DNA from: Macrostomum lignano
Taxonomy: Eukaryota
Direction: 5' to 3'
Length of the DNA stretch: 64,000 nt
Assembly (NCBI GenBank): GCA_002269645.1
Contig: NIVC01003590.1
Location: 25,281-89,280 of the forward strand
Made by a program: the position numbers and the translations under genes
The notes under the pieces: model-generated
Database searches by the model: none
What the model saw: only the letters and a program-made list of their open reading frames with translations
Told to the model about the DNA's origin: nothing
Part shown: one piece after another, positions 15,236-64,000 of the stretch
Numbering within the stretch: position 1 is the stretch's first letter
How the letters are laid out: every line of letters starts with the position of its first letter

Positions 15236-18200
15236 CTACGTGCTGAAGCTGGGATTCTCCAGGCCGGTGTCCAGCTGGATCTGCACCCGCGGGGCGCTGC
15301 TGCTCTCCAGGTTCACCGCGTCTGTGGACTTCGACCAGTTGGCGTTGGTGAAGCCGCTCTCGGCGCCGTCTACGGACTTCGGCCCGGTACGCCTCCGGTA
15401 GATGATCACCGCCGCCACCACGCCTGCGAGCAGCAGGAGGAAGGCCAGCACCGCAATGGCCACCAGCACGTCGTTCCTCAGGTCTGGCGAGTGGGTGGCA
15501 GTGACGTTTTGAATTCAATTCAATGGGCACAGTGGGGTAGAAATGGATAGGAAGAGTGGGGTAGGAATGGATAGGCAGAGTGGGGTAGGAATGGATAGGC
15601 AGAGTGGGGTAGAAATGGGTAGGCAGAGTGGAGTAGGAATGGATAGGCAGAGTGGGGTAGAAATGGGTAGGCAGAGTGGGGTAGGAATGGATTGGCACAG
15701 TGGGATAGGAATGGATTGGCACAGTGGGGTAGGAATGGATAGGCAGAGTGGGATAGGAATGGATTGGCGCAGTGGGATAGGAATGAATAAGCAGAGTGGG
15801 ATAGGAATGGATTGGCACAGTGGGGTAGGAATGGATAGGCAGAGTGGGGTAGGAATGGATAAGGAAGGCGGCGCAGAGGGATGGAGACGGCAACTATCAA
15901 GAAGAAGCCTGCGCTTCACAAACCAGCAATGATGCGACCGCTTTCGACTCCTGGCTTCGTGGTGGACGCCGGCGCCGTGGTGCGGGTGGAGGTGGTGCTC
16001 CGAGTTGGCTGCGCCGTGTGCGGCGGCGCCCGAGTCGTGGTGGTGGAGATCCCGTGCGGGGAGTCGTGGTGGAGCCCACGGTGGCGGGCAGCTTGGGCAT
16101 CTTGCAGATGTAGGAGTTCCTCTTGTTGCAATAGTGATCATTCCACTTCAGGTTTAGGTGGTACATCTCCACACAGTTCTCGTTGGGCGTGTTTGACGGC
16201 TCGCCGCCGTTCCAGTACGTGTAGCCCACCGGGCTGTTGTCCGTCCACTCGAAGCTGCTGTCCCGGCCGCGCAGCAGGCCGATCCAGTAGTCCCTGCGGG
16301 TACTTTCATCCTGAGCCTTGCTGCGCACGAGCCTGGCAACGAAGTCCTGCTCGCCCTGGCTCAGGATGCTCACCAGGCTGCTGCGGTACCGCTTGCTGCA
16401 CTCGTACATCGCCTCGGAGGCCTGCTTGGACTCGGTGCTGTTGCCCACGTAGTAGCAGCTGCTGCCGAATGGCGAGAACTCGTCCGGGCACACGCCCGGC
16501 AGCTGGGGCACCGTGGTCGGCACCGGGCCGAGGCTCTGCCTGCAGACAAAGTTCAGCCTGTCGTCGCAGTCGCCGGCGAACCAGCTGCCAGTGTAGTCCA
16601 TGAACACGCAGCTCTTCTTGCCGCCGCCGTCCGGCTGGCCGCGGCCCCAGTTCGCGAACGTCAGCGGCCACTTGTCGCTCCAGGCGAACTGGCCGCTGCC
16701 CAGCTCGTCGGCCAGGCCGATCCAAGTCGACTCCCGGCCGATCGACTCGGTTTTGAAGTGCACGAAGTTCTGCTCCCACAGGTCGTGGATTGAGGCCAGC
16801 TGGCCGCCCATGGAGCTGCAGGTGGCCACGGCGCCGGTCCAGGTGGCCGGGGTGGTGACGAACTGGAAGCAGGCTTGCTCGTAGGCGTGCCAGCCGGGCC
16901 TGCAGGCGACCATGGTCGGCGGCACCCAGTCGGTGACGAGCTCCGGGTGCTTGTAGGTCATGCAGACGTAGCCGGTCTTCTTGGTGCACCGCTGGTCGTT
17001 CCACTTGCCTGCTCGGTACTTTTCTGTGTACATCTCCACGCATTGCTCCTGCACATGGTTTTAGGCAGAGTTAAGCAAAGCTGGTCGCGGTTAGTTACCC
17101 CTAAAACAACCTATTTAGGCTGAGCTATAAGTTCACCACGCTGGGCTTCGGTAGAAATGCAGGGTGGGAACTGCGACCCTGACAGTCTCAACGTGTCTCA
17201 AATAATTGCTAAAGTACAATTAGCACTTGTATTGACAGAAGGGGTTGCAGCCTAATAGTTAGGGCAGGGGGTCGGCAAACTCGGGCCCGCGGGCCGGCCT
17301 CGGGATCCATGAAGCTTCACAATAGCAATCTGGCCCGCTCAAGGTTTGTCTCTTCTTAGCTCTCCTCTTTCATCTTCCCTCTCACCTCTCTCCCCACGCC
17401 TCCCCTTCTCTTATCTCTCATCTCCACTCTCCTCTCTTATCTCCCTCTCTCTCCACTATTCTTCCCTTTTCTCCTTTATTCCCTCTCTCCTCTCCTCTCC
17501 TCGCTCTGGCCCGCAGGGTCAGAGCGTCCGACTCAGGACTGAAAATTCGGGGGTTCGATTCTCGATCCACTAGGAACAACTTGCGTCCTTGAGCAAGACA
17601 CCTTACTCTGCATTGCTTCAGTTCACCCAGCTGTAAAATGGGTGCCAGCATTAGCTGGGGTAATTAAGGGTGTGTGTGGTGACCCCCTTCCCTCAGTCCT
17701 TGGAGCTGTCGATTGCAAGATCTTAGTTTAACTAAAACTTGTTATTATTGAAAGACTAGCGAGGCGCACCCAAACGCTGCTGGGCTCCGCGTGATCCCAG
17801 TTGGTGTAGGAAACCTCGGAGTTGTCGTGCCAGAGGTACAGGTTCTGGAAGCTCCTGGTGTACAGTCCGATCCACAGCGCCTGGTCGGTCTTGGTTTTCA
17901 TTGCAGCCAGGGCAGCTGCGGGTTGGGAAAGTTTGGCAGGAGTTGCTCACAGGCCTCACAGACCTGACTGAAGCCATCTGCAATGAGTCTCACCCTGCTC
18001 ATACTCGCTGGAGATGGACGCCAGGTAGCTTCTCGTTCCCGTGTCCACCTTCTCGCACTTCTCTCGGGCCTCAGCCCAGGTGGACGCGTCGTCCTCGTTG
18101 AAGCGGAAGCACTTGTTGCCGACGGTGTAGAAGCCCTTGGGACACCGGCCCGGCATGGGGGTCGCCGGCGGCAGCGTCCTGCTGGTGTCGTTGGACCGCT

Positions 18201-21200
18201 TGCAGATGTAGCGCAGGACGATGCCGCACTGGTCGTCGTTCCAGAGGCCCGAGTTGGAGATGATGGAGCCGCAGTGCTCAGCGCCGCCCCAGTTGTTGGG
18301 CTCGCCGTCATTCCAGTGCAGCAGGTTCACCCCGCTGCCGTCGCTCCAGCGGTAGCCCTCGTTCTGGCCGAGCTCGTTCAGGCCGATCCAGTAGGCCGCG
18401 CTGGTGATGTGCAGCTTGCTGATCAGGCCCGTCAGGAAGTCGTTCTCCTCGAAGCTGTGGATGCTTACCAGGTCGCCTCCGTGCTCCCGGCAGGTCTTCA
18501 AGCTCTGGTGCCAGGTGAGCAGCTGGGACGAGATCAGGTAGCACGACTCGTTGAAGTACTTCCAGCCGTCTCCACAGTCCGGCGCGTCCGGAGGCGTTGT
18601 GGGCTCCGGAGTGGTGCCGTTGGGATAAATTCCTTTTGGCGTCTCGCACAGCCAGTTGGTGGCCACGCTGCAGCCCTGGAGCGTCCACTTCAAGTCGTTG
18701 GGGTTGATCACCGCGCAGTTCTGGTTGTTGCCGATGTTCTCCGGCTCCTCGCCGCCGCGCCAGTTGAAGTAGGAGACCGCCTTGCCGTCCGCCCAGACGA
18801 AGCCCTGGTTGGAGTCGCGCCTGTTCAGCCCGATCCAGAAGGCGTAGAAGCCGCGCACCGTCTCGCGCAGCTTGGCGTTGGCCTCCTCGCTATTGATGGA
18901 GGCGAGGTCGCCGGCCAGCAGTTTGCACTGGGCGCGGGCCTCGGACCAGGACAGCCGGCCGGTGGACGAGCTGGCGCTGAAGGCCTTGTAGCAGGTGTTG
19001 TCGGCCTCCACCCAGCCTGGCGCGCAGTAGCCCGGGTTGTAGGTGGGAGCCAAGGTGGTGCGGCCCGGCTGCCGCGCCTGGCAGATGAAGTTCGTGTAGC
19101 GGGTCTCCTGGGACTGGCTCATCTGCCACTGCCCGGACTCTGCTGACATGGAGGCTCGGTAGCCCTGCAGGGGGACGCCAGGCTTCCAGTAGGTGAACCA
19201 GACCCGCCGGCCGTCGTCCCAGCGGAAGGTGTTGCCGGACCGGGTCAGGCCGATCCAGAAGTCGGTGCGGGCGCCGGTCTGGCTGATGCGCATGAAGAAG
19301 TGGTCCTGCACCGCCTTGCTGACGATGGTGGCCAGCGTGCCGCCGAGGTCTGCGCAGCGGGACTGCGCCTCCGCCGCGGTCAGCGCCGCGGTCCCGGTCT
19401 CGAACTTCAGGCAGTAGCCATCATGGACATCGTCGTAGTTGTCGCAGCCGTAGGGGCGCGTGATCGGCTCCGTGACCTGCACGGCAATCTGGCGCTGCTT
19501 GCAGATGAATCTGTTCAAGGCTGTGCAGCCCAGGTCGTTCCAGTCTCCGTTCTGGAATGCAAATGATGAAGAAGCGCTGCTGAGAAGGCTCAGATGCAGC
19601 CAAGTGTTGCTCTCGCATGCAGCGACGCAAATTTTCGTATGGAAATGTCAAATCGGTGCCGCTGCCTCCTGACTAAAACTGACCGACCAACTATAGAATG
19701 TCAGCAGCTAACTGATAATGTCAGTGTTTATGTCAGCAGCTAACTGATAATGTCAGTGTTTATGACAGCAGCTAACTGATAATGTCAGTGTTTATGTCAG
19801 CAGCTAACTGATAATGTCAGTGTTTATGTCAGCAGCTAACTGATAATGTCAGTGTTTATGTCAGCAGCTAACTGATAATGTCAGTAGTTATGTCAGCAGC
19901 TAACTGATAATGTCAGTGTTTATGTCAGCAGCTAACTGATAATGTCAGTAGTTATGTCAGCAGCTAACTGATAATGTCAGTGTTTATGTCAGCAGCTAAC
20001 TGATAATGTCAGTGTTTATGTCAGCAGCTAACTGATAATGTCAGTAGTTATGTCAGCAGCTAACTGATAATGTCAGTGTTTATGTCAGCAGCTAACTGAT
20101 AATGTCAGTGTTTATGTCAGCAGCTAACTGACTATGCCAGTGTTTATGTCAGCAGCTAACTGATAATGTCAGTGTTTATGTCAGCAGACTCACCCAGCCA
20201 TCGCGGTTGACGGACTCCACGCAGTCCTCGCCGCTCCGATGGTTGTTCGGCTCGTTGATGTACCAGCTCGTGAAGCGGGGTGACGACCCGTCCGTCCACT
20301 GGAAGAACATCGTGCGCTGCATCGCCACCGTGTCGTACAGGCCGATCCAGAAGCTGACTGCGGGGTTGCGGTGGGACAGTTCGGAATTATGGTTATGGCT
20401 ATAACTGGCGCCACCTGACACCCAAAGCTGAGCCCTACTCACAGTCCCCCTGCTTGCGGGCCAGCTCCAGCAGGAAGGTGTGCTCAGCCGGGCTGTTCAC
20501 CGAAGCCAAGTTGCCGCCCTGCACTCGGCAGGTCTGCTGGGCGACCTCCTGCATCACCTCGTCGTTCTCGGCGCCGAACACTTTGTAGCACATGTTCTCG
20601 AAGCCCGTGTAGCCGCTGCGGCAGCCGCGGTACTGCCCGTTCGGCACCGAGATTGTCGTCGCCGGCCTCGACGTGGTGGTCGGCGCGTTGCCGTACTTCT
20701 TGCAGATCGAGGCGAACCTTTTCTCGCAGAAGGCGTCGTTCCAGTAGGCGGAGTCGGGGTAGATCGACACGCAGTTCTCCTCCGGCGTGTTCGGCTCGCC
20801 CACCGCCCAGTTCAGGAAGATGGCCGGCTCGCCGTCGTCCCAAACCCAGCGGCCCTCCATCGCGCGATCGTTGAATCCCGACCAGAAGCTGACGATGTCG
20901 GGGTTGGCAGCGACCACCTCCTGCATCCTGCTGGCGATGTAGGACTTTTCCTGGAGGCCGGGTGCGTTAGGGTTGCTATGGGTTTGCATGTTGCTGAGTT
21001 CCGGGATGTGGGTGTTGCTATGGGCTTGGATGTCGCTGAGTTCCGGGATGTGGGTGCTGCTATGGGCTTGGATGTTGTTGAGTTTCGGGATGTGGGTGCT
21101 GCTATGGGCTTAGATGTCGCTGAGTTCCGGGATGTGGGTGTTGCTATGGGCTTGGATGTCGCTGAGTTCCGGGATGTGGGTGCTGCTATGGGCTTGGATG

Positions 21201-39563: not shown

Positions 39564-40376
39564 TTCCAAAGCAGAAGTGCCAAGCAATAAAAATTATCAA
39601 ACAGTATATACTATAGATTCATGTTTGTGGCAAATTTTATTTTAAATTTTATTCACTAATTCCCTACAAAATAATATAATTCCTAAATATAGTCACAATT
39701 GTCCTTTAGATCATTTAATATTCTATATGGCAAATAATATTCCTATTCCCTATTGGAATAAATGTTAAAAACCCACGGATGCGCACTTTAGAAAAGAGTC
39801 AAACTATTTTACTGCGCTTTAAGATTATAAGAGATGTTCCAAAAGATCTGCAGTTTCATCAAAATCAAAATTCACAAACTTTCCAAAATCAAAATTGAAA
39901 TTTCCCAAAATCATAATTCAGAAAAACAAAGTTTAGTATGATCAACACTCACTTTTTTACTTTCAATTTACTGCTTAAGCAAAAAGTAATACATGTATAT
40001 GTAGTAGAAAGTAGTTGATTTTTAGCAACTTTTTAGACACTACCAAAATTTTCACTTCTAATTTTTTTTCAAAATTGAAATTTGCTCTAAAAAATTCAAA
40101 TTTTGGAAAATTGAAATTGAATTTTCGGAATATCTCTAAGCTTAATAAATTACAAGTGTATAAGCCCCTTCAACAGAGGTATTATACCCATTTCCATGTA
40201 TATGTATTTGCTAGAGCAGCAGCCAGTAAGAAAGGGCAGCGCGCGCACAGGGGCTGTGCCTGTGCACACGCTGCGCTTTAGAAAAATTTCAAAAGTGCGC
40301 CGGACACCATCCATGGTTTTACAACTTTTTCTTATAGGGTTCCCATTGACTCAAAGATTTTCCTATTTAGTCAACA

Positions 40377-50830: not shown

Positions 50831-51320
50831 TGTATCAAAAGAAAACAAAGAAAAAATCATGTTTTGAATAAAAGTATAGCATTATTATTAGTATACGAGC
50901 CGTAGCCGATATTATTATTTGAAAAGCCCAACGCTCAATCAGTGATGGCACGTTCTATTCCATAGGATGGTAGCGTTTTAATTTTCTCGGGCAAATTTTA
51001 ATCTGAGCGCTAATAAGAGGAATGGATTTAAATCGAGGGGCTTATTTGCTTGATTTTGTTTATAATAGTTGTCAGGAAAATTTAAGGAAAAGTTGGCCTT
51101 CACCCGGCAGAGTTTAGTCTCGCATTGTTTTAGTCAAAATTGTACCAGCTGCTCACCTGAAAGAAAACAAAAAGGTATAAGACGCTTATAAGAACATATG
51201 CGAAATTGCTCTTAAATCCTTGATCATTTCATCCCTCACTAATAATAAATATATAGCCTTATAACCTTACGTGAGTTATAGTTGAAGCGTCACTCATACT
51301 AAGTAGCTGGAGTTTCTGGC

Positions 51321-54300
51321 TTAATTCTTAGTTTCCGTGACGACCGGGCCAGTGCTGGTCTCCGTGACGACCGGGCCAGTGCTGGTCTCCGTGACGACCG
51401 GGTCAGTGCTGGTCTCCGTGACGACCGGGCCAGTGCTGGTCTCCGTGACGACCGGGTCAGTGCTGGTCTCCGTGACGACCGGGCCAGTGCTGGTCTCCGT
51501 GACGACCGGGCCAGTGCTGGTCTCCGTCCACGAAGTCGACCCATCTGGATGGACAGTCTTAACCGTTTCTGAAATGAGAGGTCAGCAAAACATTTTTGCA
51601 GCAAAAAAGGTTCATGCACGTACGAGCGTACTACATGTGGCAAAGTTTTCGCTCACTGGTTCTTCCTCCAGAGTGACTGGATGTTGTGCTCGAAGATCCG
51701 CCTGCGAAACCGGAGAAATAATTTAAACATAAGCATGTCTAAACATAAAACCGCAAAACTAAGCTTTCAGTCGTTGAATTTCGTGGAAACTCAAGATACT
51801 CACTTCCAACTTTCACCGTCTTCCAACCCGACCAACCAGCGCTGCTCTTCTTTATGCCCGCACGCCCAGCTTTGCTCACGACTCCACCATCTAAAGTATT
51901 TGCAATTAGATATTATAGTTGTAAGAACAACTTTACCAAAAATATGAAATCAAACAAAACTAAAACGCCTGAGCAATATACTCTTAACAGGCTACAGAAC
52001 ACTCACCGGTCGTCTCCGAGATGAGTGTCTTGTATTCCCAGTTGTAGAGCTGATTCTGCTGCTCGACGATGTCATTAAAAACGTTACTTGTCTTAATGAC
52101 CTTCGACTGGAGACGCGATGTGACGCGCGTCAAACCCGATCGCAAAAGCGACCTACTCCGTTTTACCAGCCTCTTAAACTTCGGATTCGAGAGCTTTAAC
52201 TTCTTCTTAAGAGCCAAAACTTTCATAGTCAGCCGCTGCTGCAGTGCCTTAATCTTCAAAAGAGGAATCTTTCTTCGAGTGCTGAGAACCCTTTTAGCTA
52301 CCCGTTCAACTTGCGTCTTCTTTAATGTTCGCCTGCCAACAATTCCACGCACTGCGGAGCGAACTCTCAATCTTGGTTGGACCTTCATAATACGCTTAAC
52401 AGTCCCTCGAATATGCAATCGCGTCTTAACTGAATTTTTCTTTAAACGCAAAATTCTACGAACGCGACTCAACGATTTCACACGTCTATTCAAGCCTCTT
52501 CTCCGTTTGTAAACACGACGAGACAGACGCGGCAAAACAACCCTATGACCTGCAATATTGACCACTCGTCGGCTTACGATACGTCGCTTACTCACTCGTC
52601 GGCGTCGGCGGCGGACTACTTTTCGGCGGACCACGCGCTTGCGGATCACTCGTCGGCAGATGCGCTTGATCACACGTTTTGTCACGCGTCGTCCCTTAAT
52701 GACTCGGCGTCGGATGATGCGCTTGATCACGCGTCGTATCTTGCGTCGGCCCTTAGTCACTCGTTTGCGGACGACTCGTCGGATGATGCGCTTGACCTTG
52801 CGGACGCTGCGTTTAATGCGTTTAACGATACGTCGCTTACTCACTCGTCGGCGTCGGCGGCGGACTACTTTTCGGCGGACCACGCGCTTGCGGATCACTC
52901 GTCGGCAGATGCGCTTGATCACACGTTTTGTCACGCGTCGTCCCTTAATGACTCGGCGTCGGATGATGCGCTTGATCACGCGTCGTATCTTGCGTCGGCC
53001 CTTAGTCACTCGTTTGCGGACGACTCGTCGGATGATGCGCTTGACCTTGCGGACGCTGCGTTTAATGCGTTTAACGATACGTCGCTTACTCACTCGTCGG
53101 CGTCGGCGGCGGACTACTTTTCGGCGGACCACGCGCTTGCGGATCACTCGTCGGCAGATGCGCTTGATCACACGTTTTGTCACGCGTCGTCCCTTAATGA
53201 CTCGGCGTCGGATGATGCGCTTGATCACGCGTCGTATCTTGCGTCGGCCCTTAGTCACTCGTTTGCGGACGACTCGTCGGATGATGCGCTTGACCTTGCG
53301 GACGCTGCGTTTAATGCGTTTAACGATACGTCGCTTACTCACTCGTCGGCGTCGGCGGCGGACTACTTTTCGGCGGACCACGCGCTTGCGGATCACTCGT
53401 CGGCAGATGCGCTTGATCACACGTTTTGTCACGCGTCGTCCCTTAATGACTCGGCGTCGGATGATGCGCTTGATCACGCGTCGTATCTTGCGTCGGCCCT
53501 TAGTCACTCGTTTGCGGACGACTCGTCGGATGATGCGCTTGACCTTGCGGACGCTGCGTTTAATGCGTTTAACGATACGTCGCTTACTCACTCGTCGGCG
53601 TCGGCGGCGGACTACTTTTCGGCGGACCACGCGCTTGCGGATCACTCGTCGGCAGATGCGCTTGATCACACGTTTTGTCACGCGTCGTCCCTTAATGACT
53701 CGGCGTCGGATGATGCGCTTGATCACGCGTCGTATCTTGCGTCGGCCCTTAGTCACTCGTTTGCGGACGACTCGTCGGATGATGCGCTTGACCTTGCGGA
53801 CGCTGCGTTTAATGCGTTTAACGATACGTCGCTTACTCACTCGTCGGCGTCGGCGGCGGACTACTTTTCGGCGGACCACGCGCTTGCGGATCACTCGTCG
53901 GCAGATGCGCTTGATCACACGTTTTGTCACGCGTCGTCCCTTAATGACTCGGCGTCGGATGATGCGCTTGATCACGCGTCGTATCTTGCGTCGGCCCTTA
54001 GTCACTCGTTTGCGGACGACTCGTCGGATGATGCGCTTGACCTTGCGGACGCTGCGTTTAATGCGTTTAACGATACGTCGCTTACTCACTCGTCGGCGTC
54101 GGCGGCGGACTACTTTTCGGCGGACCACGCGCTTGCGGATCACTCGTCGGCAGATGCGCTTGATCACACGTTTTGTCACGCGTCGTCCCTTAATGACTCG
54201 GCGTCGGATGATGCGCTTGATCACGCGTCGTATCTTGCGTCGGCCCTTAGTCACTCGTTTGCGGACGACTCGTCGGATGATGCGCTTGACCTTGCGGACG

Positions 54301-57300
54301 CTGCGTTTAATGCGTTTAACGATACGTCGCTTACTCACTCGTCGGCGTCGGCGGCGGACTACTTTTCGGCGGACCACGCGCTTGCGGATCACTCGTCGGC
54401 AGATGCGCTTGATCACACGTTTTGTCACGCGTCGTCCCTTAATGACTCGGCGTCGGATGATGCGCTTGATCACGCGTCGTATCTTGCGTCGGCCCTTAGT
54501 CACTCGTTTGCGGACGACTCGTCGGATGATGCGCTTGACCTTGCGGACGCTGCGTTTAATGCGTTTAACGATACGTCGCTTACTCACTCGTCGGCGTCGG
54601 CGGCGGACTACTTTTCGGCGGACCACGCGCTTGCGGATCACTCGTCGGCAGATGCGCTTGATCACACGTTTTGTCACGCGTCGTCCCTTAATGACTCGGC
54701 GTCGGATGATGCGCTTGATCACGCGTCGTATCTTGCGTCGGCCCTTAGTCACTCGTTTGCGGACGACTCGTCGGATGATGCGCTTGACCTTGCGGACGCT
54801 GCGTTTAATGCGTTTAACGATACGTCGCTTACTCACTCGTCGGCGTCGGCGGCGGACTACTTTTCGGCGGACCACGCGCTTGCGGATCACTCGTCGGCAG
54901 ATGCGCTTGATCACACGTTTTGTCACGCGTCGTCCCTTAATGACTCGGCGTCGGATGATGCGCTTGATCACGCGTCGTATCTTGCGTCGGCCCTTAGTCA
55001 CTCGTTTGCGGACGACTCGTCGGATGATGCGCTTGACCTTGCGGACGCTGCGTTTAATGCGTTTAACGATACGTCGCTTACTCACTCGTCGGCGTCGGCG
55101 GCGGACTACTTTTCGGCGGACCACGCGCTTGCGGATCACTCGTCGGCAGATGCGCTTGATCACACGTTTTGTCACGCGTCGTCCCTTAATGACTCGGCGT
55201 CGGATGATGCGCTTGATCACGCGTCGTATCTTGCGTCGGCCCTTAGTCACTCGTTTGCGGACGACTCGTCGGATGATGCGCTTGACCTTGCGGACGCTGC
55301 GTTTAATGCGTTTAACGATACGTCGCTTACTCACTCGTCGGCGTCGGCGGCGGACTACTTTTCGGCGGACCACGCGCTTGCGGATCACTCGTCGGCAGAT
55401 GCGCTTGATCACACGTTTTGTCACGCGTCGTCCCTTAATGACTCGGCGTCGGATGATGCGCTTGATCACGCGTCGTATCTTGCGTCGGCCCTTAGTCACT
55501 CGTTTGCGGACGACTCGTCGGATGATGCGCTTGACCTTGCGGACGCTGCGTTTAATGCGTTTAACGATACGTCGCTTACTCACTCGTCGGCGTCGGCGGC
55601 GGACTACTTTTCGGCGGACCACGCGCTTGCGGATCACTCGTCGGCAGATGCGCTTGATCACACGTTTTGTCACGCGTCGTCCCTTAATGACTCGGCGTCG
55701 GATGATGCGCTTGATCACGCGTCGTATCTTGCGTCGGCCCTTAGTCACTCGTTTGCGGACGACTCGTCGGATGATGCGCTTGACCTTGCGGACGCTGCGT
55801 TTAATGCGTTTAACGATACGTCGCTTACTCACTCGTCGGCGTCGGCGGCGGACTACTTTTCGGCGGACCACGCGCTTGCGGATCACTCGTCGGCAGATGC
55901 GCTTGATCACACGTTTTGTCACGCGTCGTCCCTTAATGACTCGGCGTCGGATGATGCGCTTGATCACGCGTCGTATCTTGCGTCGGCCCTTAGTCACTCG
56001 TTTGCGGACGACTCGTCGGATGATGCGCTTGACCTTGCGGACGCTGCGTTTAATGCGTTTAACGATACGTCGCTTACTCACTCGTCGGCGTCGGCGGCGG
56101 ACTACTTTTCGGCGGACCACGCGCTTGCGGATCACTCGTCGGCAGATGCGCTTGATCACACGTTTTGTCACGCGTCGTCCCTTAATGACTCGGCGTCGGA
56201 TGATGCGCTTGATCACGCGTCGTATCTTGCGTCGGCCCTTAGTCACTCGTTTGCGGACGACTCGTCGGATGATGCGCTTGACCTTGCGGACGCTGCGTTT
56301 AATGCGTTTAACGATACGTCGCTTACTCACTCGTCGGCGTCGGCGGCGGACTACTTTTCGGCGGACCACGCGCTTGCGGATCACTCGTCGGCAGATGCGC
56401 TTGATCACACGTTTTGTCACGCGTCGTCCCTTAATGACTCGGCGTCGGATGATGCGCTTGATCACGCGTCGTATCTTGCGTCGGCCCTTAGTCACTCGTT
56501 TGCGGACGACTCGTCGGATGATGCGCTTGACCTTGCGGACGCTGCGTTTAATGCGTTTAACGATACGTCGCTTACTCACTCGTCGGCGTCGGCGGCGGAC
56601 TACTTTTCGGCGGACCACGCGCTTGCGGATCACTCGTCGGCAGATGCGCTTGATCACACGTTTTGTCACGCGTCGTCCCTTAATGACTCGGCGTCGGATG
56701 ATGCGCTTGATCACGCGTCGTATCTTGCGTCGGCCCTTAGTCACTCGTTTGCGGACGACTCGTCGGATGATGCGCTTGACCTTGCGGACGCTGCGTTTAA
56801 TGCGTTTAACGATACGTCGCTTACTCACTCGTCGGCGTCGGCGGCGGACTACTTTTCGGCGGACCACGCGCTTGCGGATCACTCGTCGGCAGATGCGCTT
56901 GATCACACGTTTTGTCACGCGTCGTCCCTTAATGACTCGGCGTCGGATGATGCGCTTGATCACGCGTCGTATCTTGCGTCGGCCCTTAGTCACTCGTTTG
57001 CGGACGACTCGTCGGATGATGCGCTTGACCTTGCGGACGCTGCGTTTAATGCGTTTAACGATACGTCGCTTACTCACTCGTCGGCGTCGGCGGCGGACTA
57101 CTTTTCGGCGGACCACGCGCTTGCGGATCACTCGTCGGCAGATGCGCTTGATCACACGTTTTGTCACGCGTCGTCCCTTAATGACTCGGCGTCGGATGAT
57201 GCGCTTGATCACGCGTCGTATCTTGCGTCGGCCCTTAGTCACTCGTTTGCGGACGACTCGTCGGATGATGCGCTTGACCTTGCGGACGCTGCGTTTAATG

Positions 57301-60300
57301 CGTTTAACGATACGTCGCTTACTCACTCGTCGGCGTCGGCGGCGGACTACTTTTCGGCGGACCACGCGCTTGCGGATCACTCGTCGGCAGATGCGCTTGA
57401 TCACACGTTTTGTCACGCGTCGTCCCTTAATGACTCGGCGTCGGATGATGCGCTTGATCACGCGTCGTATCTTGCGTCGGCCCTTAGTCACTCGTTTGCG
57501 GACGACTCGTCGGATGATGCGCTTGACCTTGCGGACGCTGCGTTTAATGCGTTTAACGATACGTCGCTTACTCACTCGTCGGCGTCGGCGGCGGACTACT
57601 TTTCGGCGGACCACGCGCTTGCGGATCACTCGTCGGCAGATGCGCTTGATCACACGTTTTGTCACGCGTCGTCCCTTAATGACTCGGCGTCGGATGATGC
57701 GCTTGATCACGCGTCGTATCTTGCGTCGGCCCTTAGTCACTCGTTTGCGGACGACTCGTCGGATGATGCGCTTGACCTTGCGGACGCTGCGTTTAATGCG
57801 TTTAACGATACGTCGCTTACTCACTCGTCGGCGTCGGCGGCGGACTACTTTTCGGCGGACCACGCGCTTGCGGATCACTCGTCGGCAGATGCGCTTGATC
57901 ACACGTTTTGTCACGCGTCGTCCCTTAATGACTCGGCGTCGGATGATGCGCTTGATCACGCGTCGTATCTTGCGTCGGCCCTTAGTCACTCGTTTGCGGA
58001 CGACTCGTCGGATGATGCGCTTGACCTTGCGGACGCTGCGTTTAATGCGTTTAACGATACGTCGCTTACTCACTCGTCGGCGTCGGCGGCGGACTACTTT
58101 TCGGCGGACCACGCGCTTGCGGATCACTCGTCGGCAGATGCGCTTGATCACACGTTTTGTCACGCGTCGTCCCTTAATGACTCGGCGTCGGATGATGCGC
58201 TTGATCACGCGTCGTATCTTGCGTCGGCCCTTAGTCACTCGTTTGCGGACGACTCGTCGGATGATGCGCTTGACCTTGCGGACGCTGCGTTTAATGCGTT
58301 TAACGATACGTCGCTTACTCACTCGTCGGCGTCGGCGGCGGACTACTTTTCGGCGGACCACGCGCTTGCGGATCACTCGTCGGCAGATGCGCTTGATCAC
58401 ACGTTTTGTCACGCGTCGTCCCTTAATGACTCGGCGTCGGATGATGCGCTTGATCACGCGTCGTATCTTGCGTCGGCCCTTAGTCACTCGTTTGCGGACG
58501 ACTCGTCGGATGATGCGCTTGACCTTGCGGACGCTGCGTTTAATGCGTTTAACGATACGTCGCTTACTCACTCGTCGGCGTCGGCGGCGGACTACTTTTC
58601 GGCGGACCACGCGCTTGCGGATCACTCGTCGGCAGATGCGCTTGATCACACGTTTTGTCACGCGTCGTCCCTTAATGACTCGGCGTCGGATGATGCGCTT
58701 GATCACGCGTCGTATCTTGCGTCGGCCCTTAGTCACTCGTTTGCGGACGACTCGTCGGATGATGCGCTTGACCTTGCGGACGCTGCGTTTAATGCGTTTA
58801 ACGATACGTCGCTTACTCACTCGTCGGCGTCGGCGGCGGACTACTTTTCGGCGGACCACGCGCTTGCGGATCACTCGTCGGCAGATGCGCTTGATCACAC
58901 GTTTTGTCACGCGTCGTCCCTTAATGACTCGGCGTCGGATGATGCGCTTGATCACGCGTCGTATCTTGCGTCGGCCCTTAGTCACTCGTTTGCGGACGAC
59001 TCGTCGGATGATGCGCTTGACCTTGCGGACGCTGCGTTTAATGCGTTTAACGATACGTCGCTTACTCACTCGTCGGCGTCGGCGGCGGACTACTTTTCGG
59101 CGGACCACGCGCTTGCGGATCACTCGTCGGCAGATGCGCTTGATCACACGTTTTGTCACGCGTCGTCCCTTAATGACTCGGCGTCGGATGATGCGCTTGA
59201 TCACGCGTCGTATCTTGCGTCGGCCCTTAGTCACTCGTTTGCGGACGACTCGTCGGATGATGCGCTTGACCTTGCGGACGCTGCGTTTAATGCGTTTAAC
59301 GATACGTCGCTTACTCACTCGTCGGCGTCGGCGGCGGACTACTTTTCGGCGGACCACGCGCTTGCGGATCACTCGTCGGCAGATGCGCTTGATCACACGT
59401 TTTGTCACGCGTCGTCCCTTAATGACTCGGCGTCGGATGATGCGCTTGATCACGCGTCGTATCTGCGTCGGCCCTTAGTCACTCGTTTGCGGACGACTCG
59501 TCGGATGATGCGCTTGACCTTGCGGACGCTGCGTTTAATGCGTTTAACGATACGTCGCTTACTCACTCGTCGGCGTCGGCGGCGGACTACTTTTCGGCGG
59601 ACCACGCGCTTGCGGATCACTCGTCGGCAGATGCGCTTGATCACACGTTTTGTCACGCGTCGTCCCTTAATGACTCGGCGTCGGATGATGCGCTTGATCA
59701 CGCGTCGTATCTGCGTCGGCCCTTAGTCACTCGTTTGCGGACGACTCGTCGGATGATGCGCTTGACCTTGCGGACGCTGCGTTTAATGCGTTTAACGATA
59801 CGTCGCTTACTCACTCGTCGGCGTCGGCGGCGGACTACTTTTCGGCGGACCACGCGCTTGCGGATCACTCGTCGGCAGATGCGCTTGATCACACGTTTTG
59901 TCACGCGTCGTCCCTTAATGACTCGGCGTCGGATGATGCGCTTGATCACGCGTCGTATCTTGCGTCGGCCTTAGTCACTCGTTTGCGGACGACTCGTCGG
60001 ATGATGCGCTTGACCTTGCGGACGCTGCGTTTAATGCGTTTAACGATACGTCGCTTACTCACTCGTCGGCGTCGGCGGCGGACTACTTTTCGGCGGACCA
60101 CGCGCTTGCGGATCACTCGTCGGCAGATGCGCTTGATCACACGTTTTGTCACGCGTCGTCCCTTAATGACTCGGCGTCGGATGATGCGCTTGATCACGCG
60201 TCGTATCTTGCGTCGGCCCTTAGTCACTCGTTTGCGGACGACTCGTCGGATGATGCGCTTGACCTTGCGGACGCTGCGTTTAATGCGTTTAACGATACGT

Positions 60301-63300
60301 CGCTTACTCACTCGTCGGCGTCGGCGGCGGACTACTTTTCGGCGGACCACGCGCTTGCGGATCACTCGTCGGCAGATGCGCTTGATCACACGTTTTGTCA
60401 CGCGTCGTCCCTTAATGACTCGGCGTCGGATGATGCGCTTGATCACGCGTCGTATCTTGCGTCGGCCCTTAGTCACTCGTTTGCGGACGACTCGTCGGAT
60501 GATGCGCTTGACCTTGCGGACGCTGCGTTTAATGCGTTTAACGATACGTCGCTTACTCACTCGTCGGCGTCGGCGGCGGACTACTTTTCGGCGGACCACG
60601 CGCTTGCGGATCACTCGTCGGCAGATGCGCTTGATCACACGTTTTGTCACGCGTCGTCCCTTAATGACTCGGCGTCGGATGATGCGCTTGATCACGCGTC
60701 GTATCTGGCGTCGGCCCTTAGTCACTCGTTTGCGGACGACTCGTCGGATGATGCGCTTGACCTTGCGGACGCTGCGTTTAATGCGTTTAACGATACGTCG
60801 CTTACTCACTCGTCGGCGTCGGCGGCGGACTACTTTTCGGCGGACCACGCGCTTGCGGATCACTCGTCGGCAGATGCGCTTGATCACACGTTTTGTCACG
60901 CGTCGTCCCTTAATGACTCGGCGTCGGATGATGCGCTTGATCACGCGTCGTATCTGGCGTCGGCCCTTAGTCACTCGTTTGCGGACGACTCGTCGGATGA
61001 TGCGCTTGACCTTGCGGACGCTGCGTTTAATGCGTTTAACGATACGTCGCTTACTCACTCGTCGGCGTCGGCGGCGGACTACTTTTCGGCGGACCACGCG
61101 CTTGCGGATCACTCGTCGGCAGATGCGCTTGATCACACGTTTTGTCACGCGTCGTCCCTTAATGACTCGGCGTCGGATGATGCGCTTGATCACGCGTCGT
61201 ATCTGCGTCGGCCCTTAGTCACTCGTTTGCGGACGACTCGTCGGATGATGCGCTTGACCTTGCGGACGCTGCGTTTAATGCGTTTAACGATACGTCGCTT
61301 ACTCACTCGTCGGCGTCGGCGGCGGACTACTTTTCGGCGGACCACGCGCTTGCGGATCACTCGTCGGCAGATGCGCTTGATCACACGTTTTGTCACGCGT
61401 CGTCCCTTAATGACTCGGCGTCGGATGATGCGCTTGATCACGCGTCGTATCTGCGTCGGCCCTTAGTCACTCGTTTGCGGACGACTCGTCGGATGATGCG
61501 CTTGACCTTGCGGACGCTGCGTTTAATGCGTTTAACGATACGTCGCTTACTCACTCGTCGGCGTCGGCGGCGGACTACTTTTCGGCGGACCACGCGCTTG
61601 CGGATCACTCGTCGGCAGATGCGCTTGATCACACGTTTTGTCACGCGTCGTCCCTTAATGACTCGGCGTCGGATGATGCGCTTGATCACGCGTCGTATCT
61701 GGCGTCGGCCCTTAGTCACTCGTTTGCGGACGACTCGTCGGATGATGCGCTTGACCTTGCGGACGCTGCGTTTAATGCGTTTAACGATACGTCGCTTACT
61801 CACTCGTCGGCGTCGGCGGCGGACTACTTTTCGGCGGACCACGCGCTTGCGGATCACTCGTCGGCAGATGCGCTTGATCACACGTTTTGTCACGCGTCGT
61901 CCCTTAATGACTCGGCGTCGGATGATGCGCTTGATCACGCGTCGTATCTTGGCGTCGGCCCTTAGTCACTCGTTTGCGGACGACTCGTCGGATGATGCGC
62001 TTGACCTTGCGGACGCTGCGTTTAATGCGTTTAACGATACGTCGCTTACTCACTCGTCGGCGTCGGCGGCGGACTACTTTTCGGCGGACCACGCGCTTGC
62101 GGATCACTCGTCGGCAGATGCGCTTGATCACACGTTTTGTCACGCGTCGTCCCTTAATGACTCGGCGTCGGATGATGCGCTTGATCACGCGTCGTATCTT
62201 GCGTCGGCCCTTAGTCACTCGTTTGCGGACGACTCGTCGGATGATGCGCTTGACCTTGCGGACGCTGCGTTTAATGCGTTTAACGATACGTCGCTTACTC
62301 ACTCGTCGGCGTCGGCGGCGGACTACTTTTCGGCGGGCGCGACACGCGCTTGCGGATCACTCGTCGGCAGATGCGCTTGATCACACGTTTTGTCACGCGT
62401 CGTCCCTTAATGACTCGGCGTCGGATGATGCGCTTGATCACGCGTCGTATCTTGCGTCGGCCCTTAGTCACTCGTTTGCGGACGACTCGTCGGATGATGC
62501 GCTTGACCTTGCGGACGCTGCGTTTAATGCGTTTAACGATACGTCGCTTACTCACTCGTCGGCGTCGGCGGCGGACTACTTTTCGGCGGACCACGCGCTT
62601 GCGGATCACTCGTCGGCAGATGCGCTTGATCACACGTTTTGTCACGCGTCGTCCCTTAATGACTCGGCGTCGGATGATGCGCTTGATCACGCGTCGTATC
62701 TGCGTCGGCCTTAGTCACTCGTTTGCGGACGACTCGTCGGATGATGCGCTTGACCTTGCGGACGCTGCGTTTAATGCGTTTAACGATACGTCGCTTACTC
62801 ACTCGTCGGCGTCGGCGGCGGACTACTTTTCGGCGGACCACGCGCTTGCGGATCACTCGTCGGCAGATGCGCTTGATCACACGTTTTGTCACGCGTCGTC
62901 CCTTAATGACTCGGCGTCGGATGATGCGCTTGATCACGCGTCGTATCTTGCGTCGGCCCTTAGTCACTCGTTTGCGGACGACTCGTCGGATGATGCGCTT
63001 GACCTTGCGGACGCTGCGTTTAATGCGTTTAACGATACGTCGCTTACTCACTCGTCGGCGTCGGCGGCGGACTACTTTTCGGCGGACCACGCGCTTGCGG
63101 ATCACTCGTCGGCAGATGCGCTTGATCACACGTTTTGTCACGCGTCGTCCCTTAATGACTCGGCGTCGGATGATGCGCTTGATCACGCGTCGTATCTTGC
63201 GTCGGCCCTTAGTCACTCGTTTGCGGACGACTCGTCGGATGATGCGCTTGACCTTGCGGACGCTGCGTTTAATGCGTTTAACGATACGTCGCTTACTCAC

Positions 63301-64000
63301 TCGTCGGCGTCGGCGGCGGACTACTTTTCGGCGGACCACGCGCTTGCGGATCACTCGTCGGCAGATGCGCTTGATCACACGTTTTGTCACGCGTCGTCCC
63401 TTAATGACTCGGCGTCGGATGATGCGCTTGATCACGCGTCGTATCTGCGTCGGCCCTTAGTCACTCGTTTGCGGACGACTCGTCGGATGATGCGCTTGAC
63501 CTTGCGGACGCTGCGTTTAATGCGTTTAACGATACGTCGCTTACTCACTCGTCGGCGTCGGCGGCGGACTACTTTTCGGCGGACCACGCGCTTGCGGATC
63601 ACTCGTCGGCAGATGCGCTTGATCACACGTTTTGTCACGCGTCGTCCCTTAATGACTCGGCGTCGGATGATGCGCTTGATCACGCGTCGTATCTGCGTCG
63701 GCCCTTAGTCACTCGTTTGCGGACGACTCGTCGGATGATGCGCTTGACCTTGCGGACGCTGCGTTTAATGCGTTTAACGATACGTCGCTTACTCACTCGT
63801 CGGCGTCGGCGGCGGACTACTTTTCGGCGGACCACGCGCTTGCGGATCACTCGTCGGCAGATGCGCTTGATCACACGTTTTGTCACGCGTCGTCCCTTAA
63901 TGACTCGGCGTCGGATGATGCGCTTGATCACGCGTCGTATCTGCGTCGGCCCTTAGTCACTCGTTTGCGGACGACTCGTCGGATGATGCGCTTGACCTTG
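51321..64000 (-). CDS. 3' part of a giant polycationic repeat protein (>4,000 aa visible, 5' end outside the window); exons >64000-52007, 51701-51657, 51568-51321
   Basis: R/K/V/I frame continues ~190 aa into unique sequence, then phase-1 donor ACC G|GTGAGT, acceptor TTTCGCAG|, 45-nt symmetric exon GGSSSTTSSHSGGRT, donor A|GTGAGC, acceptor TCATTTCAG|, final exon KTVKTVHPDGSTSW(TETST[G/D]PVV)7TETKN*; indels appear above 59460. Confidence 0.75.
51335..51527 (-). repeat. 27-bp coding minisatellite encoding TETST(G/D)PVV, ~7 copies
   Basis: Unit length is a multiple of 3 and in frame with the spliced last exon. Confidence 0.85.
52575..64000 (-). repeat. 249-bp tandem array, ~46 copies, encoding an 83-aa unit
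   Basis: GATACGTCGC at 52578 recurs at 52827; identical translations in three frames up to ~59450 imply nucleotide-identical copies. Confidence 0.98.

What the first reader, a model, noticed from the sequence alone, without database searches (positions are those of the whole stretch)
51321..52007. Hidden spliced C-terminus shows the giant repeat is a real gene and gives it a Thr/Ser-rich, weakly acidic tail
The ORF track ends at ...ISETTGECSVAC*, but GTGAGT at 52006 is a donor. Two further exons join with consistent phase-1 junctions: GGSSSTTSSHSGGRT, then KTVKTVHPDGSTSW(TETST[G/D]PVV)7TETKN*. Consensus sites, a 45-nt symmetric exon, an 88-nt intron and an in-frame 27-bp coding repeat are unlikely together by chance. 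The mucin-like tail is a candidate O-glycosylation region and is opposite in charge to the core, suggesting a secreted material (inference).
Basis: partly seen in the sequence, partly recalled or inferred. Interest (0 to 1): 0.7.

Follow-up and report, generated by a model that had tools for sequence, protein, structure and literature searches.

The report
Spliced tail of giant flatworm polycation gene
The region holds the real, spliced 3' end of an unannotated, flatworm-specific (Macrostomum lignano) gene.

Summary
The only related protein found in the public databases searched is Macrostomum lignano UniProt A0A1I8JLP0 (99% identical over exon A). It confirms splicing here but uses another chain. 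It also leaves the TETSTGPVV repeat through a weak donor to a micro-exon (51156-51130, VSSWYNFD*). All exon combinations keep the frame. Better evidence that the repeat is coding comes from elsewhere. A 189-codon unique ORF follows the array in the same frame (1/20000 shuffles open). That unique stretch resembles the array beyond composition. The repeat length is a multiple of three. The unit has alpha-helical amphipathic periodicity (+48 charge per 83 aa). Caveats: there is no ATG inside the array, upstream units carry frameshifting 1-bp indels that are possibly assembly artefacts, and the N-terminus lies off the window. No homologues or domains were found. The closest analogue is the Lys/Arg-rich regions of adhesion protein Mlig-ap1. 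The secreted-polycation role is an inference.

The parts
52576..64000 (-). 249-bp (83-codon) tandem array of at least 45.9 copies that runs off the window end. The unit is VIKRIIRRRVIKGRRVTKRVIKRICRRVIRKRVVRRKVVRRRRRRVSKRRIVKRIKRSVRKVKRIIRRVVRKRVTKGRRKIRR. The frame is open and continuous from 59453 down. The units starting at 59453 down to 52979 are 100% identical. Units above 59453 carry 1-bp indels that switch the frame.
52007..52575 (-). Unique, non-repeated end of exon A: 189 codons plus the first base of a split codon. It is a basic/hydrophobic degenerate version of the repeat pattern. The first in-frame ATG is at 52388 (MKVQPRL...).
   Evidence: 0 stops in the coding frame against 14, 15, 4, 4 and 15 in the other five frames; 1/20000 shuffles open. 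Similarity to the array is z=3.3 with 0/1000 shuffles reaching it. 99% identical to P0001.
51891..52006 (-). Intron 1 (116 nt, GC 0.30). Donor CCG|GTGAGT, acceptor tactttag|AT.
51804..51890 (-). Exon B, 87 nt, phase 1/1, encoding (D)GGVVSKAGRAGIKKSSAGWSGWKTVKVG.
   Evidence: Donor score 8.1, acceptor score 1.1. GC 0.56.
51702..51803 (-). Intron 2 (102 nt, GC 0.36). If exon C is skipped, it is part of a 235-nt intron (51803..51569).
51657..51701 (-). It has good sites but is absent from the database model. It is a candidate constitutive or cassette exon.
   Evidence: Acceptor 9.7, donor 6.0. Comparable in-phase exons occur at 0.059/kb background. GC 0.53.
51569..51656 (-). Intron 3 (88 nt, GC 0.43).
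51321..51568 (-). Exon D coding part: KTVKTVHPDGSTSW + 7 x TETST[G/D]PVV + TETKN, stop TAA at 51323..51321. It contains the 27-bp x 7.2 repeat at 51334..51527.
   Evidence: Acceptor score 7.5. The start of the exon is used by P0001.
51130..51156 (-). Micro-exon E (GTG AGC AGC TGG TAC AAT TTT GAC TAA = VSSWYNFD*) behind a very strong acceptor ttttgttttctttcag. It is the coding terminal exon in P0001, reached from the weak donor CCG|GTCGTC inside the repeat. Alternatively it is a 3'-UTR exon reached from the donor at 51270.
   Evidence: Acceptor score 12.0. Repeat donors -0.8. Donor CAC|GTAAGG at 51270 scores 7.4.

Best explanation
[quoted passage not shown] Region 51130-52007 (minus strand) is the spliced 3' end of a lineage-specific protein-coding gene.

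Gene layout:
- The large upstream exon holds a 249-bp tandem array of at least 46 units (more than 3,800 residues inside the window).
- That exon continues in the same frame through 189 unique codons.
- It then joins small phase-1/1 exons: B (87 nt), probably C (45 nt), and D. The protein ends in a Thr/Ser/Gly-rich tail with seven TETST[G/D]PVV units.

Protein properties (shown):
- Each 83-residue repeat is 41% Arg, 17% Lys and 34% Val+Ile.
- Each unit carries +48 net charge and one Cys.
- Hydrophobic residues recur about every 3.6-3.8 positions, so each unit encodes cationic amphipathic helices.

Mechanism (inferred):
- Such a chain can only compact when its charge is neutralised. I expect it to act as a giant polycation that binds and condenses polyanions such as sulfated or acidic glycans.
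- The most likely setting is a stored or secreted material, similar to the Lys/Arg-rich regions of the M. lignano adhesion protein Mlig-ap1.
- The Thr/Ser/Pro tail would be a short, possibly O-glycosylated end piece.

Shown: the sequence features, splice-site quality, the coding signature of the unique stretch and of the repeat, and the use of the exon A donor, exon B and the exon D acceptor by an independent gene model.
Inferred: translation of the whole array, inclusion of exon C, the TETKN* end, secretion, glycosylation and polyanion binding.

The confidence given (0.7) is for the core claim: a real spliced gene whose ORF is continuous with the array. The secreted-polycation role on its own I put at about 0.35.
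For: - Organism and independent model: the only hit in 5.8 billion proteins and in 1.84 billion representatives is M. lignano UniRef A0A1I8JLP0. It maps to the window as 52388..52008 + 51890..51805 + 51568..~51504 + 51156..51133, with 1 mismatch.
- Coding signature: the unique 189 codons have 0 stops, against 14, 15, 4, 4 and 15 in the other frames, and 1/20000 shuffles are open.
- Only one of the three minus-strand frames of the unit is open, and it is the one continuous with the unique ORF.
- The plus-strand ORFs stop within about 30 nt of the array edge.
- The unit (249), its sub-repeat (57) and the tail repeat (27) are all multiples of 3. Most of the ~60 other minisatellites in the window are not.
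- Hydrophobic periodicity peaks at 95-100 degrees; 1/2000 shuffles reach it.
- The unique region resembles the array beyond composition: z=3.3, 0/1000 shuffles.
- Splice sites and the exon/intron GC contrast fit the model.
- The AlphaFold single-sequence model is mostly helical but low confidence, pLDDT 50.
- Precedent in the same species: Mlig-ap1 has more than 3,600 aa of Lys/Arg-rich repeats with pI above 14. Its partner Mlig-ap2 carries Gal-beta(1-3)-GalNAc, so mucin-type O-glycans exist in this animal (PMC6410801).
- Absence from annotation is expected. Transcripts overlapping repeat annotations were excluded from the Mlig_3_7 gene set (PMC5730564).
Against: - There is no in-frame ATG anywhere in the repeat unit. 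The first Met is at 52388, exactly where the database model starts.
- Units above 59453 carry 12 frame-shifting indel events (ten 1-bp deletions, one 1-bp insertion and one 4-bp insertion) in 10 of the 18 units there, so a continuous ORF over the whole array is not shown.
- The N-terminus, and therefore any signal peptide, lies beyond the window.
- The database model skips exon C and splices out the TETSTGPVV repeat.
- No transcript-derived protein covering any junction was found.
- No homologue, no Pfam domain and no literature string match were found.
- The tail and C-terminal peptide strings were not found in the held, truncated mass-spectrometry supplements of the adhesion paper.
- The composition (R/V/K/I, 2% Gly) differs from the Gly/Arg/Lys-rich regions of Mlig-ap1 (PMC8621496).
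- Very Arg-rich proteins are often nuclear rather than secreted.
Confidence: 0.7

Rival explanations
1. A small gene sits next to a satellite. The real gene starts at the ATG at 52388 and encodes only about 185-250 residues, as in UniProt A0A1I8JLP0. The 249-bp array upstream is untranslated (5' flank or UTR), and its open frame is a by-product of a CG-rich unit.
For: - The unit has no Met codon, and the first ATG coincides with the start of the database model.
- Three of the six frames of the unit are open.
- The window is full of non-coding minisatellites.
- Frameshifts occur in the upstream units.
Against: - The single open minus-strand frame is exactly the one continuous with the downstream ORF. 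The 62 unique codons between the array and the ATG are also open.
- The stretch before the Met already resembles the array more than its shuffles do (20/1000), and the whole unique region does so at 0/1000.
- The unit shows helical amphipathic periodicity (1/2000).
- The period is a multiple of 3.
- A database model starting at the first ATG after a repeat is what a truncated contig or repeat masking would produce.
Confidence: 0.15
2. The gene and the array are real, but the protein does not carry the TETSTGPVV tail. A donor inside the first repeat unit (CCG|GTCGTC) is spliced to micro-exon E, giving ...HPDGSTSWTETSTGPVSSWYNFD*. This would be either the main isoform or an alternative one.
For: - This is the structure of the only database model.
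- Acceptor E is the strongest site in the region, score 12.0.
Against: - The repeat donors score -0.8, far below the other donors at 6.0-11.0.
- A good donor at 51270 (7.4), downstream of the TAA, could pair with the same acceptor. That would make E a 3'-UTR exon that an annotation pipeline wrongly linked to the coding sequence.
- The evidence basis of the database model could not be checked.
Confidence: 0.25
3. The locus is a decaying pseudogene or a mis-assembled locus. The array once coded, but upstream frameshifts have now broken it, or the perfectly identical units are an assembly or polishing construct.
For: - There are 12 frame-shifting indel events in the 18 units above 59453.
- The consecutive units below that point show zero differences. 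Such uniformity is unusual and is typical of consensus homogenisation in PacBio-based assemblies (assembly history in PMC5730564).
Against: - Eight of the ten 1-bp deletions fall at unit position 238. Other units carry an A>C substitution at that same position, and the remaining two deletions fall in a GGG run. This is the pattern expected from consensus errors at a polymorphic site or homopolymer rather than from independent decay.
- The unique ORF, the splice sites and the near-identical second copy (P0001) are all intact.
Confidence: 0.1
4. The protein is intracellular and binds nucleic acids or filaments. It could be a giant protamine-like or filaggrin-like polycation, for example for sperm chromatin or granule condensation, rather than a secreted material. 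A variant of this idea is a polyprotein cut at its R-x-K/R-R sites into many cationic amphipathic peptides.
For: - The unit is 41% Arg, with RRRRRR clusters separated by V/S/K, which resembles protamines (the protamine composition is from my general knowledge).
- There are four R-x-[KR]-R motifs per unit.
- No signal peptide is visible because the N-terminus is off the window.
Against: - Its size (more than 3,800 aa) is far beyond any known sperm basic protein.
- A Thr/Ser/Pro-rich repeat tail and phase-1 mini-exons are more typical of extracellular proteins (general knowledge; weak evidence).
- The same species has a precedent for a secreted Lys/Arg-rich giant protein.
Confidence: 0.15
5. There is no gene at all. 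The array is a satellite, the downstream ORF and splice sites are chance, and the UniProt entry is a spurious ab initio call.
For: - The genome is about 15% simple and tandem repeats (PMC5730564).
- No homologues exist outside this species.
- The UniProt name 'N-acetylmuramoyl-L-alanine amidase' has no support from any domain match here.
Against: - 1/20000 shuffles give the 189-codon ORF.
- GC rises sharply in each predicted exon.
- Exon-C-like exons are expected at about 0.03 per region of this size.
- A second genomic copy keeps every exon, with 1 amino-acid change in 185.
Confidence: 0.03

Closest known systems
Mlig-ap1, Macrostomum lignano adhesion protein 1 (Wunderer et al. 2019, PMC6410801; GenBank MH586844)
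   Same: - Same species.
- It is a giant protein (5,407 aa) of which two thirds is tandemly repeated, extremely basic Lys/Arg-rich sequence (pI above 14).
- It had no homologues outside the lineage when described.
- Its repeats are hard to assemble and to detect by tryptic mass spectrometry.
- Its proposed role is charge-based interaction with negatively charged sugars.
   Different: - The Mlig-ap1 repeats are described as Gly/Arg/Lys-rich, and its antibody peptide is SRKPRRKNRKSRKP. The unit here is Arg/Val/Lys/Ile with 2% Gly, no Pro or Asn, and a helical amphipathic pattern.
- Mlig-ap1 has a C-type lectin/vWD/EGF core. No domain is seen in the part of this gene inside the window.
- No sequence match to any NCBI or UniRef protein was returned for the unit or the C-terminus other than A0A1I8JLP0.
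- The Mlig-ap1 sequence itself was not available for a direct alignment.
Mucin-type Pro/Thr/Ser tandem-repeat regions (for example the central repeats of Mlig-ap2, which carry Gal-beta(1-3)-GalNAc)
   Same: The tail has a short in-frame tandem repeat rich in Thr/Ser with one Pro per 9 residues (TETSTGPVV x 7). Four of every 9 residues are hydroxylated.
   Different: - It covers only 68 residues.
- It has Glu/Asp in every unit.
- It may be partly spliced out.
- Secretion is not shown, and there are no flanking Cys-rich domains.
Profilaggrin / trichohyalin-type giant cationic repeat proteins
   Same: These also have many near-identical tandem units encoded in one huge exon, a strongly basic product that condenses an anionic partner, and copy-number-variable arrays (general knowledge).
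   Different: They are vertebrate epidermal proteins with an N-terminal S100 domain, and they are His/Arg/Ser/Gly-rich or Arg/Glu-rich. There is no sequence relation, and the N-terminus here is unknown.
Protamines and protamine-like sperm nuclear basic proteins
   Same: They also have more than 40% Arg, with Arg clusters separated by Val/Ser (general knowledge).
   Different: They are tens to a few hundred residues long, not thousands. They lack an Ile/Val amphipathic pattern, and there are no expression data for this gene.

Membership tests
Mlig-ap1-type flatworm adhesion protein | Detectable sequence homology to Mlig-ap1 or ap1-like proteins | tested here: not met
   Searches with the repeat unit and with the C-terminus returned only A0A1I8JLP0. 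This is an indirect test: I could not confirm that MH586844 is in the database, and HMMER bias filters penalise low-complexity queries.
Mlig-ap1-type flatworm adhesion protein | Gly/Arg/Lys-rich low-complexity repeat regions | tested here: not met
   The unit is R 41%, V 19%, K 17%, I 14.5%, G 2.4%. Mlig-ap1 regions are described as 'GRK' (PMC8621496). Only the extreme basicity is shared.
Mlig-ap1-type flatworm adhesion protein | Core of C-type lectin, vWD/C8/TIL and EGF domains | tested here: inconclusive
   No Pfam domain was found in the last 450 residues, but the 5' part of the gene lies beyond window position 64000.
Mlig-ap1-type flatworm adhesion protein | Expression in adhesive gland cells, presence in footprints, and a non-adhesive RNAi phenotype | not testable with these tools
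   The tail and C-terminal peptide strings TETST, HPDGSTSW and NWEYK, and the unit strings VIKR and RRVIK, were absent from the held, truncated supplements of PMC6410801. This is weak negative evidence.
Mucin-like O-glycosylated PTS repeat | Tandem repeats dominated by Thr/Ser/Pro | tested here: met
   TETSTGPVV x 7: Thr+Ser 44% and Pro 11% of each unit. The stretch is very short (68 aa) and contains acidic residues.
Mucin-like O-glycosylated PTS repeat | The protein enters the secretory pathway (signal peptide) and is glycosylated | not testable with these tools
   The N-terminus is outside the window, and there are no glycoproteomic data.
Protein-coding tandem repeat (as opposed to a non-coding satellite) | Period a multiple of 3, and a single sense frame open and continuous with the flanking unique coding sequence | tested here: met
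   249 = 83 x 3. One of three minus-strand frames is open, and it is continuous with the 189-codon unique ORF.
Protein-coding tandem repeat (as opposed to a non-coding satellite) | Uninterrupted frame over the whole array, with a start codon | tested here: not met
   The frame is broken by 12 indel events above 59453. There is no ATG in the unit, and the start of the array is outside the window. The indel pattern suggests assembly error, but this is unproven.
Protein-coding tandem repeat (as opposed to a non-coding satellite) | Transcript or peptide evidence | not testable with these tools
   No RNA-seq or proteome access. One database gene model covers only the unique 3' part.
Protamine-like sperm basic protein | Small size (under about 300 aa), Arg-rich, expressed in the testis | tested here: not met
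   Arg-rich: yes. Size: at least 2,489 aa in one open frame. Expression is unknown.

The most novel reading that the evidence does not exclude
This would be a previously undescribed, species-restricted giant polycation of more than 3,800 residues. It is built from perfectly homogenised 83-residue cationic amphipathic-helix units, each with +48 charge and one Cys. It would be a new component of a flatworm secreted material (adhesive, rhabdite or mucus matrix) working by charge-driven condensation with polyanionic glycans. Alternatively it would be a polyprotein processed at its R-x-K/R-R sites into dozens of identical antimicrobial-like peptides.
Probability: 0.15. Interest if true: 0.65.

Novelty: new member of a known kind. 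Interest (0 to 1): 0.4.

Why it matters
Giant repeat genes are routinely lost from annotation. The Mlig_3_7 gene set explicitly dropped transcripts overlapping repeats, and the only database entry for this locus is a 185-aa stub with a name that no domain match here supports.

If the array is translated, M. lignano has a second giant polycationic protein besides Mlig-ap1. The function of the Mlig-ap1 Lys/Arg regions is still called enigmatic by the authors who study them (PMC8621496). A second, compositionally different example with amphipathic helices and one Cys per unit would give a comparison point for charge-based reversible adhesion and for biomimetic coacervate design.

For the scan itself, this case shows that in-phase mini-exons can be read from raw sequence, but also that a plausible chain can miss an exon.

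Tried and rejected
- Rfam scan of the whole window: no RNA family.
- Protein search with two repeat units: 2,228 word-sharing candidates, none significant.
- Focused search with the junction-spanning 122-aa peptide, to catch transcript-derived ORFs: only P0001.
- Exhaustive HMMER search of 1.84 billion representatives with the unique 189 aa: only P0001.
- Lookup of the contig encoding P0001: not on record. Its cluster has a single UniRef member, so no paralogous locus could be compared.
- Pfam on the last 450 residues: nothing below E=3.8.
- AlphaFold2 single-sequence model of two units plus the unique region: pLDDT 49.7, helical segments. This is too poor for a fold search, so none was run.
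The contiguous ORF piece was used instead.
- Supplements of the adhesion paper: the Mlig-ap1 sequence is present only as an image. No match to the unit or tail strings was found.
- Full-text search for the peptide strings and for the accession: 0 papers.
- The ML2 genome paper (PMC4603488) is not held, so the evidence basis of the UniProt model could not be checked.
- I considered the plus strand as the coding strand and rejected it. Its two long ORFs end within about 30 nt of the array edge, and the unique flank has 4, 4 and 15 stops in the three plus-strand frames.
- I considered that this locus is Mlig-ap1 itself and rejected it on composition and the lack of any hit.
Full report
**What is in the sequence.**
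- On the minus strand, a 249-bp tandem array occupies 52576..64000. It has 45.9 copies at 99% identity and runs off the window.
- One minus-strand frame of the unit is open. The other two frames carry about 5-7 stops per unit.
- The unit encodes VIKRIIRRRVIKGRRVTKRVIKRICRRVIRKRVVRRKVVRRRRRRVSKRRIVKRIKRSVRKVKRIIRRVVRKRVTKGRRKIRR.
- From 59453 downwards the frame is continuous for 2,489 codons. It leaves the array at 52575 and ends ...ISETTGECSVAC* at 51984.

Each one is present:
- The exon ends ACC G at 52007, followed by GTGAGT.
- Acceptor tttcgcag|G opens a 45-nt exon at 51701..51657, which is followed by GTGAGC.
- An 88-nt intron follows.
- Acceptor tcatttcag|A at 51568 opens KTVKTVHPDGSTSW, seven TETST[G/D]PVV units, TETKN and TAA (51323..51321).
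- The 27-bp repeat is reported at 51334..51527.

**Is it more than chance?** I scored sites with a generic metazoan splice-site weight matrix that I wrote myself. It is not a flatworm-trained model.
- Donor scores are A 11.0, B 8.1 and C 6.0.
- Acceptor scores are C 9.7, D 7.5 and E 12.0.
- In-phase, stop-free exons with sites as good as the 45-nt exon occur at 0.059 per kb on either strand of window 1-51000. That gives about 0.03 expected in the 438 nt between the exon A donor and the exon D acceptor.
- GC is 0.53-0.64 in the predicted exons and 0.30-0.43 in the predicted introns.
- The open frame of the 27-bp repeat is not informative. It is open in all three minus-strand frames and in one plus-strand frame.

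Inside its first 'intron' lies an 87-nt exon at 51890..51804.
- Its acceptor is tactttag|AT and its donor is GAA|GTGAGT.
- It is phase 1/1 and encodes (D)GGVVSKAGRAGIKKSSAGWSGWKTVKVG.
- Every internal exon is phase 1/1, so all combinations (A+B+C+D, A+C+D, A+B+D, A+D) give the same tail frame.

**Independent evidence and organism.**
- A search of 5.8 billion proteins with the spliced C-terminus gave one hit: UniRef A0A1I8JLP0 of Macrostomum lignano, 185 aa (P0001).
- An exhaustive HMMER search of 1.84 billion representatives with the unique 189 residues gave the same single hit, at 99% identity.
- A focused junction query also gave only this hit.
- Mapped back to the window, P0001 is 52388..52008 (1 mismatch in 127 aa) + 51890..51805 + 51568..~51504 + 51156..51133.
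- The window is therefore M. lignano or a very close relative. Its load of about 60 different minisatellites fits a genome in which simple and tandem repeats make up 15% (PMC5730564).
- The model confirms the exon A donor, exon B and the exon D acceptor. It does not contain exon C.
- It leaves the first TETSTGPVV unit at CCG|GTCGTC and joins a micro-exon behind the acceptor ttttgttttctttcag, ending VSSWYNFD*.
- That internal donor scores -0.8, while a good donor at 51270 (CAC|GTAAGG, 7.4) lies downstream of the TAA.
- I therefore think exon E is more likely a 3'-UTR exon that the annotation linked to the coding sequence. This is inference, because I could not see how the model was built; the ML2 paper is not held.

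**Does this show that the giant repeat is a gene?**
- Spliced exons prove only that the unique 3' part is genic.
- The unit contains no Met codon. The first ATG in the frame is at 52388, exactly where P0001 starts.
- The stronger arguments are these:
  1. The 189 unique codons after the array are stop-free in the array's frame, against 14, 15, 4, 4 and 15 stops in the other five frames. Only 1 of 20,000 shuffles is open.
  2. The 62 codons before the first ATG are included in that open stretch.
  3. The unique stretch resembles the array more than composition-matched shuffles do (z=3.3, 0/1000). This looks like old repeat units that diverged while staying coding.
  4. The hydrophobic residues of the unit recur at 95-100 degrees per residue, the alpha-helical amphipathic signature (1/2000 shuffles).
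  5. The repeat lengths 249, 57 and 27 are all multiples of three, unlike most other arrays in the window.
  6. The plus-strand ORFs end within about 30 nt of the array edge.
- The counter-evidence is the state of the upstream units:
  - Units above 59453 carry ten 1-bp deletions, one 1-bp insertion and one 4-bp insertion, and these switch the frame.
  - Eight of the deletions are at unit position 238, the same position where other units show A>C. The other two deletions fall in a GGG run.
  - This pattern, together with the run of perfectly identical units below 59453, is what consensus polishing of a long-read assembly produces in repeats. M. lignano assemblies were PacBio-based and Pilon-polished. 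This is inference, not proof.

**What the protein would be.**
- Each unit is R 41%, V 19%, K 17% and I 14.5%, with one Cys and net charge +48.
- The unique part carries +54 over 189 aa.
- The post-exon-A tail is T/S/G/V-rich and overall about neutral (net -2). Only the final 68 residues are acidic (net -9).
- AlphaFold2 without an alignment predicts helices at low confidence (pLDDT 49.7).
- No Pfam domain is present.

**Mechanism (inferred).**
- The protein would be a polycation that cannot fold alone. It forms amphipathic helices and condenses when it meets polyanions.
- The one Cys per unit could allow cross-linking.
- The nearest precedent is in the same animal. Mlig-ap1 has more than 3,600 residues of Lys/Arg-rich repeats with pI above 14, and these are proposed to interact with negatively charged sugars in the adhesive. 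Its partner Mlig-ap2 is O-glycosylated (PMC6410801).
- Those repeats are Gly/Arg/Lys-rich (PMC8621496), whereas the unit here has 2% Gly, and no sequence match was found. So this gene works like Mlig-ap1 at most; it is not shown to be a member of that family.
- An intracellular, protamine-like or filaggrin-like role, or a polyprotein role, cannot be excluded without the N-terminus.

**Verdict.**
The gene and its splicing are real, but the exon chain is incomplete and the terminal structure is ambiguous.
- The 'secreted, O-glycosylated' reading is a reasonable but untested inference.
- The gene is an orphan, and its annotation is only a stub.
- Interest is moderate.

Noticed in passing
window 15897-20989, minus strand: Three long ORFs (15897..17054, 17956..19518, 20435..20989) encode at least seven C-type lectin domains (Pfam Lectin_C, E 1e-17 to 4e-60). 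They look like exons of a mannose-receptor-like multi-lectin gene, separated by introns that carry minisatellites.
   Followed up: partly
window 32696-33460 and 38763-39587, minus strand: One ORF encodes an Alg9-like mannosyltransferase (Glyco_transf_22, E 1e-61). Another encodes a metallo-beta-lactamase-fold protein (Lactamase_B_2, E 7e-20, HNHMDH motif). These are ordinary housekeeping-type neighbours lying between the lectin gene and the repeat gene.
   Followed up: partly
window 1-50900: About 60 distinct minisatellite arrays are present, with periods of 8-143 bp and lengths of 0.1-3 kb. One is a 3.1-kb array of a 16-bp unit at 35541-38668. They fill much of the non-coding space, and many give long spurious ORFs in several frames.
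   Followed up: no
window 52979-59453: The consecutive 249-bp units here are 100% identical. All variation in the array is confined to the units above 59453 and concentrates at unit positions 238 and 228. This reflects either very recent homogenisation or an assembly or polishing artefact.
   Followed up: partly
window 51151-51158, minus strand: The strongest acceptor in the region (…tttcag|) is immediately followed by a strong donor-like GTGAGC (score 11.6). The same AG|GT could therefore serve as an acceptor or as a donor, and the 3'-UTR structure is ambiguous.
   Followed up: no
UniProt A0A1I8JLP0 (P0001): The database name 'N-acetylmuramoyl-L-alanine amidase' has no support from any domain match found here. 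It looks like a spurious automatic name for a low-complexity protein.
   Followed up: partly
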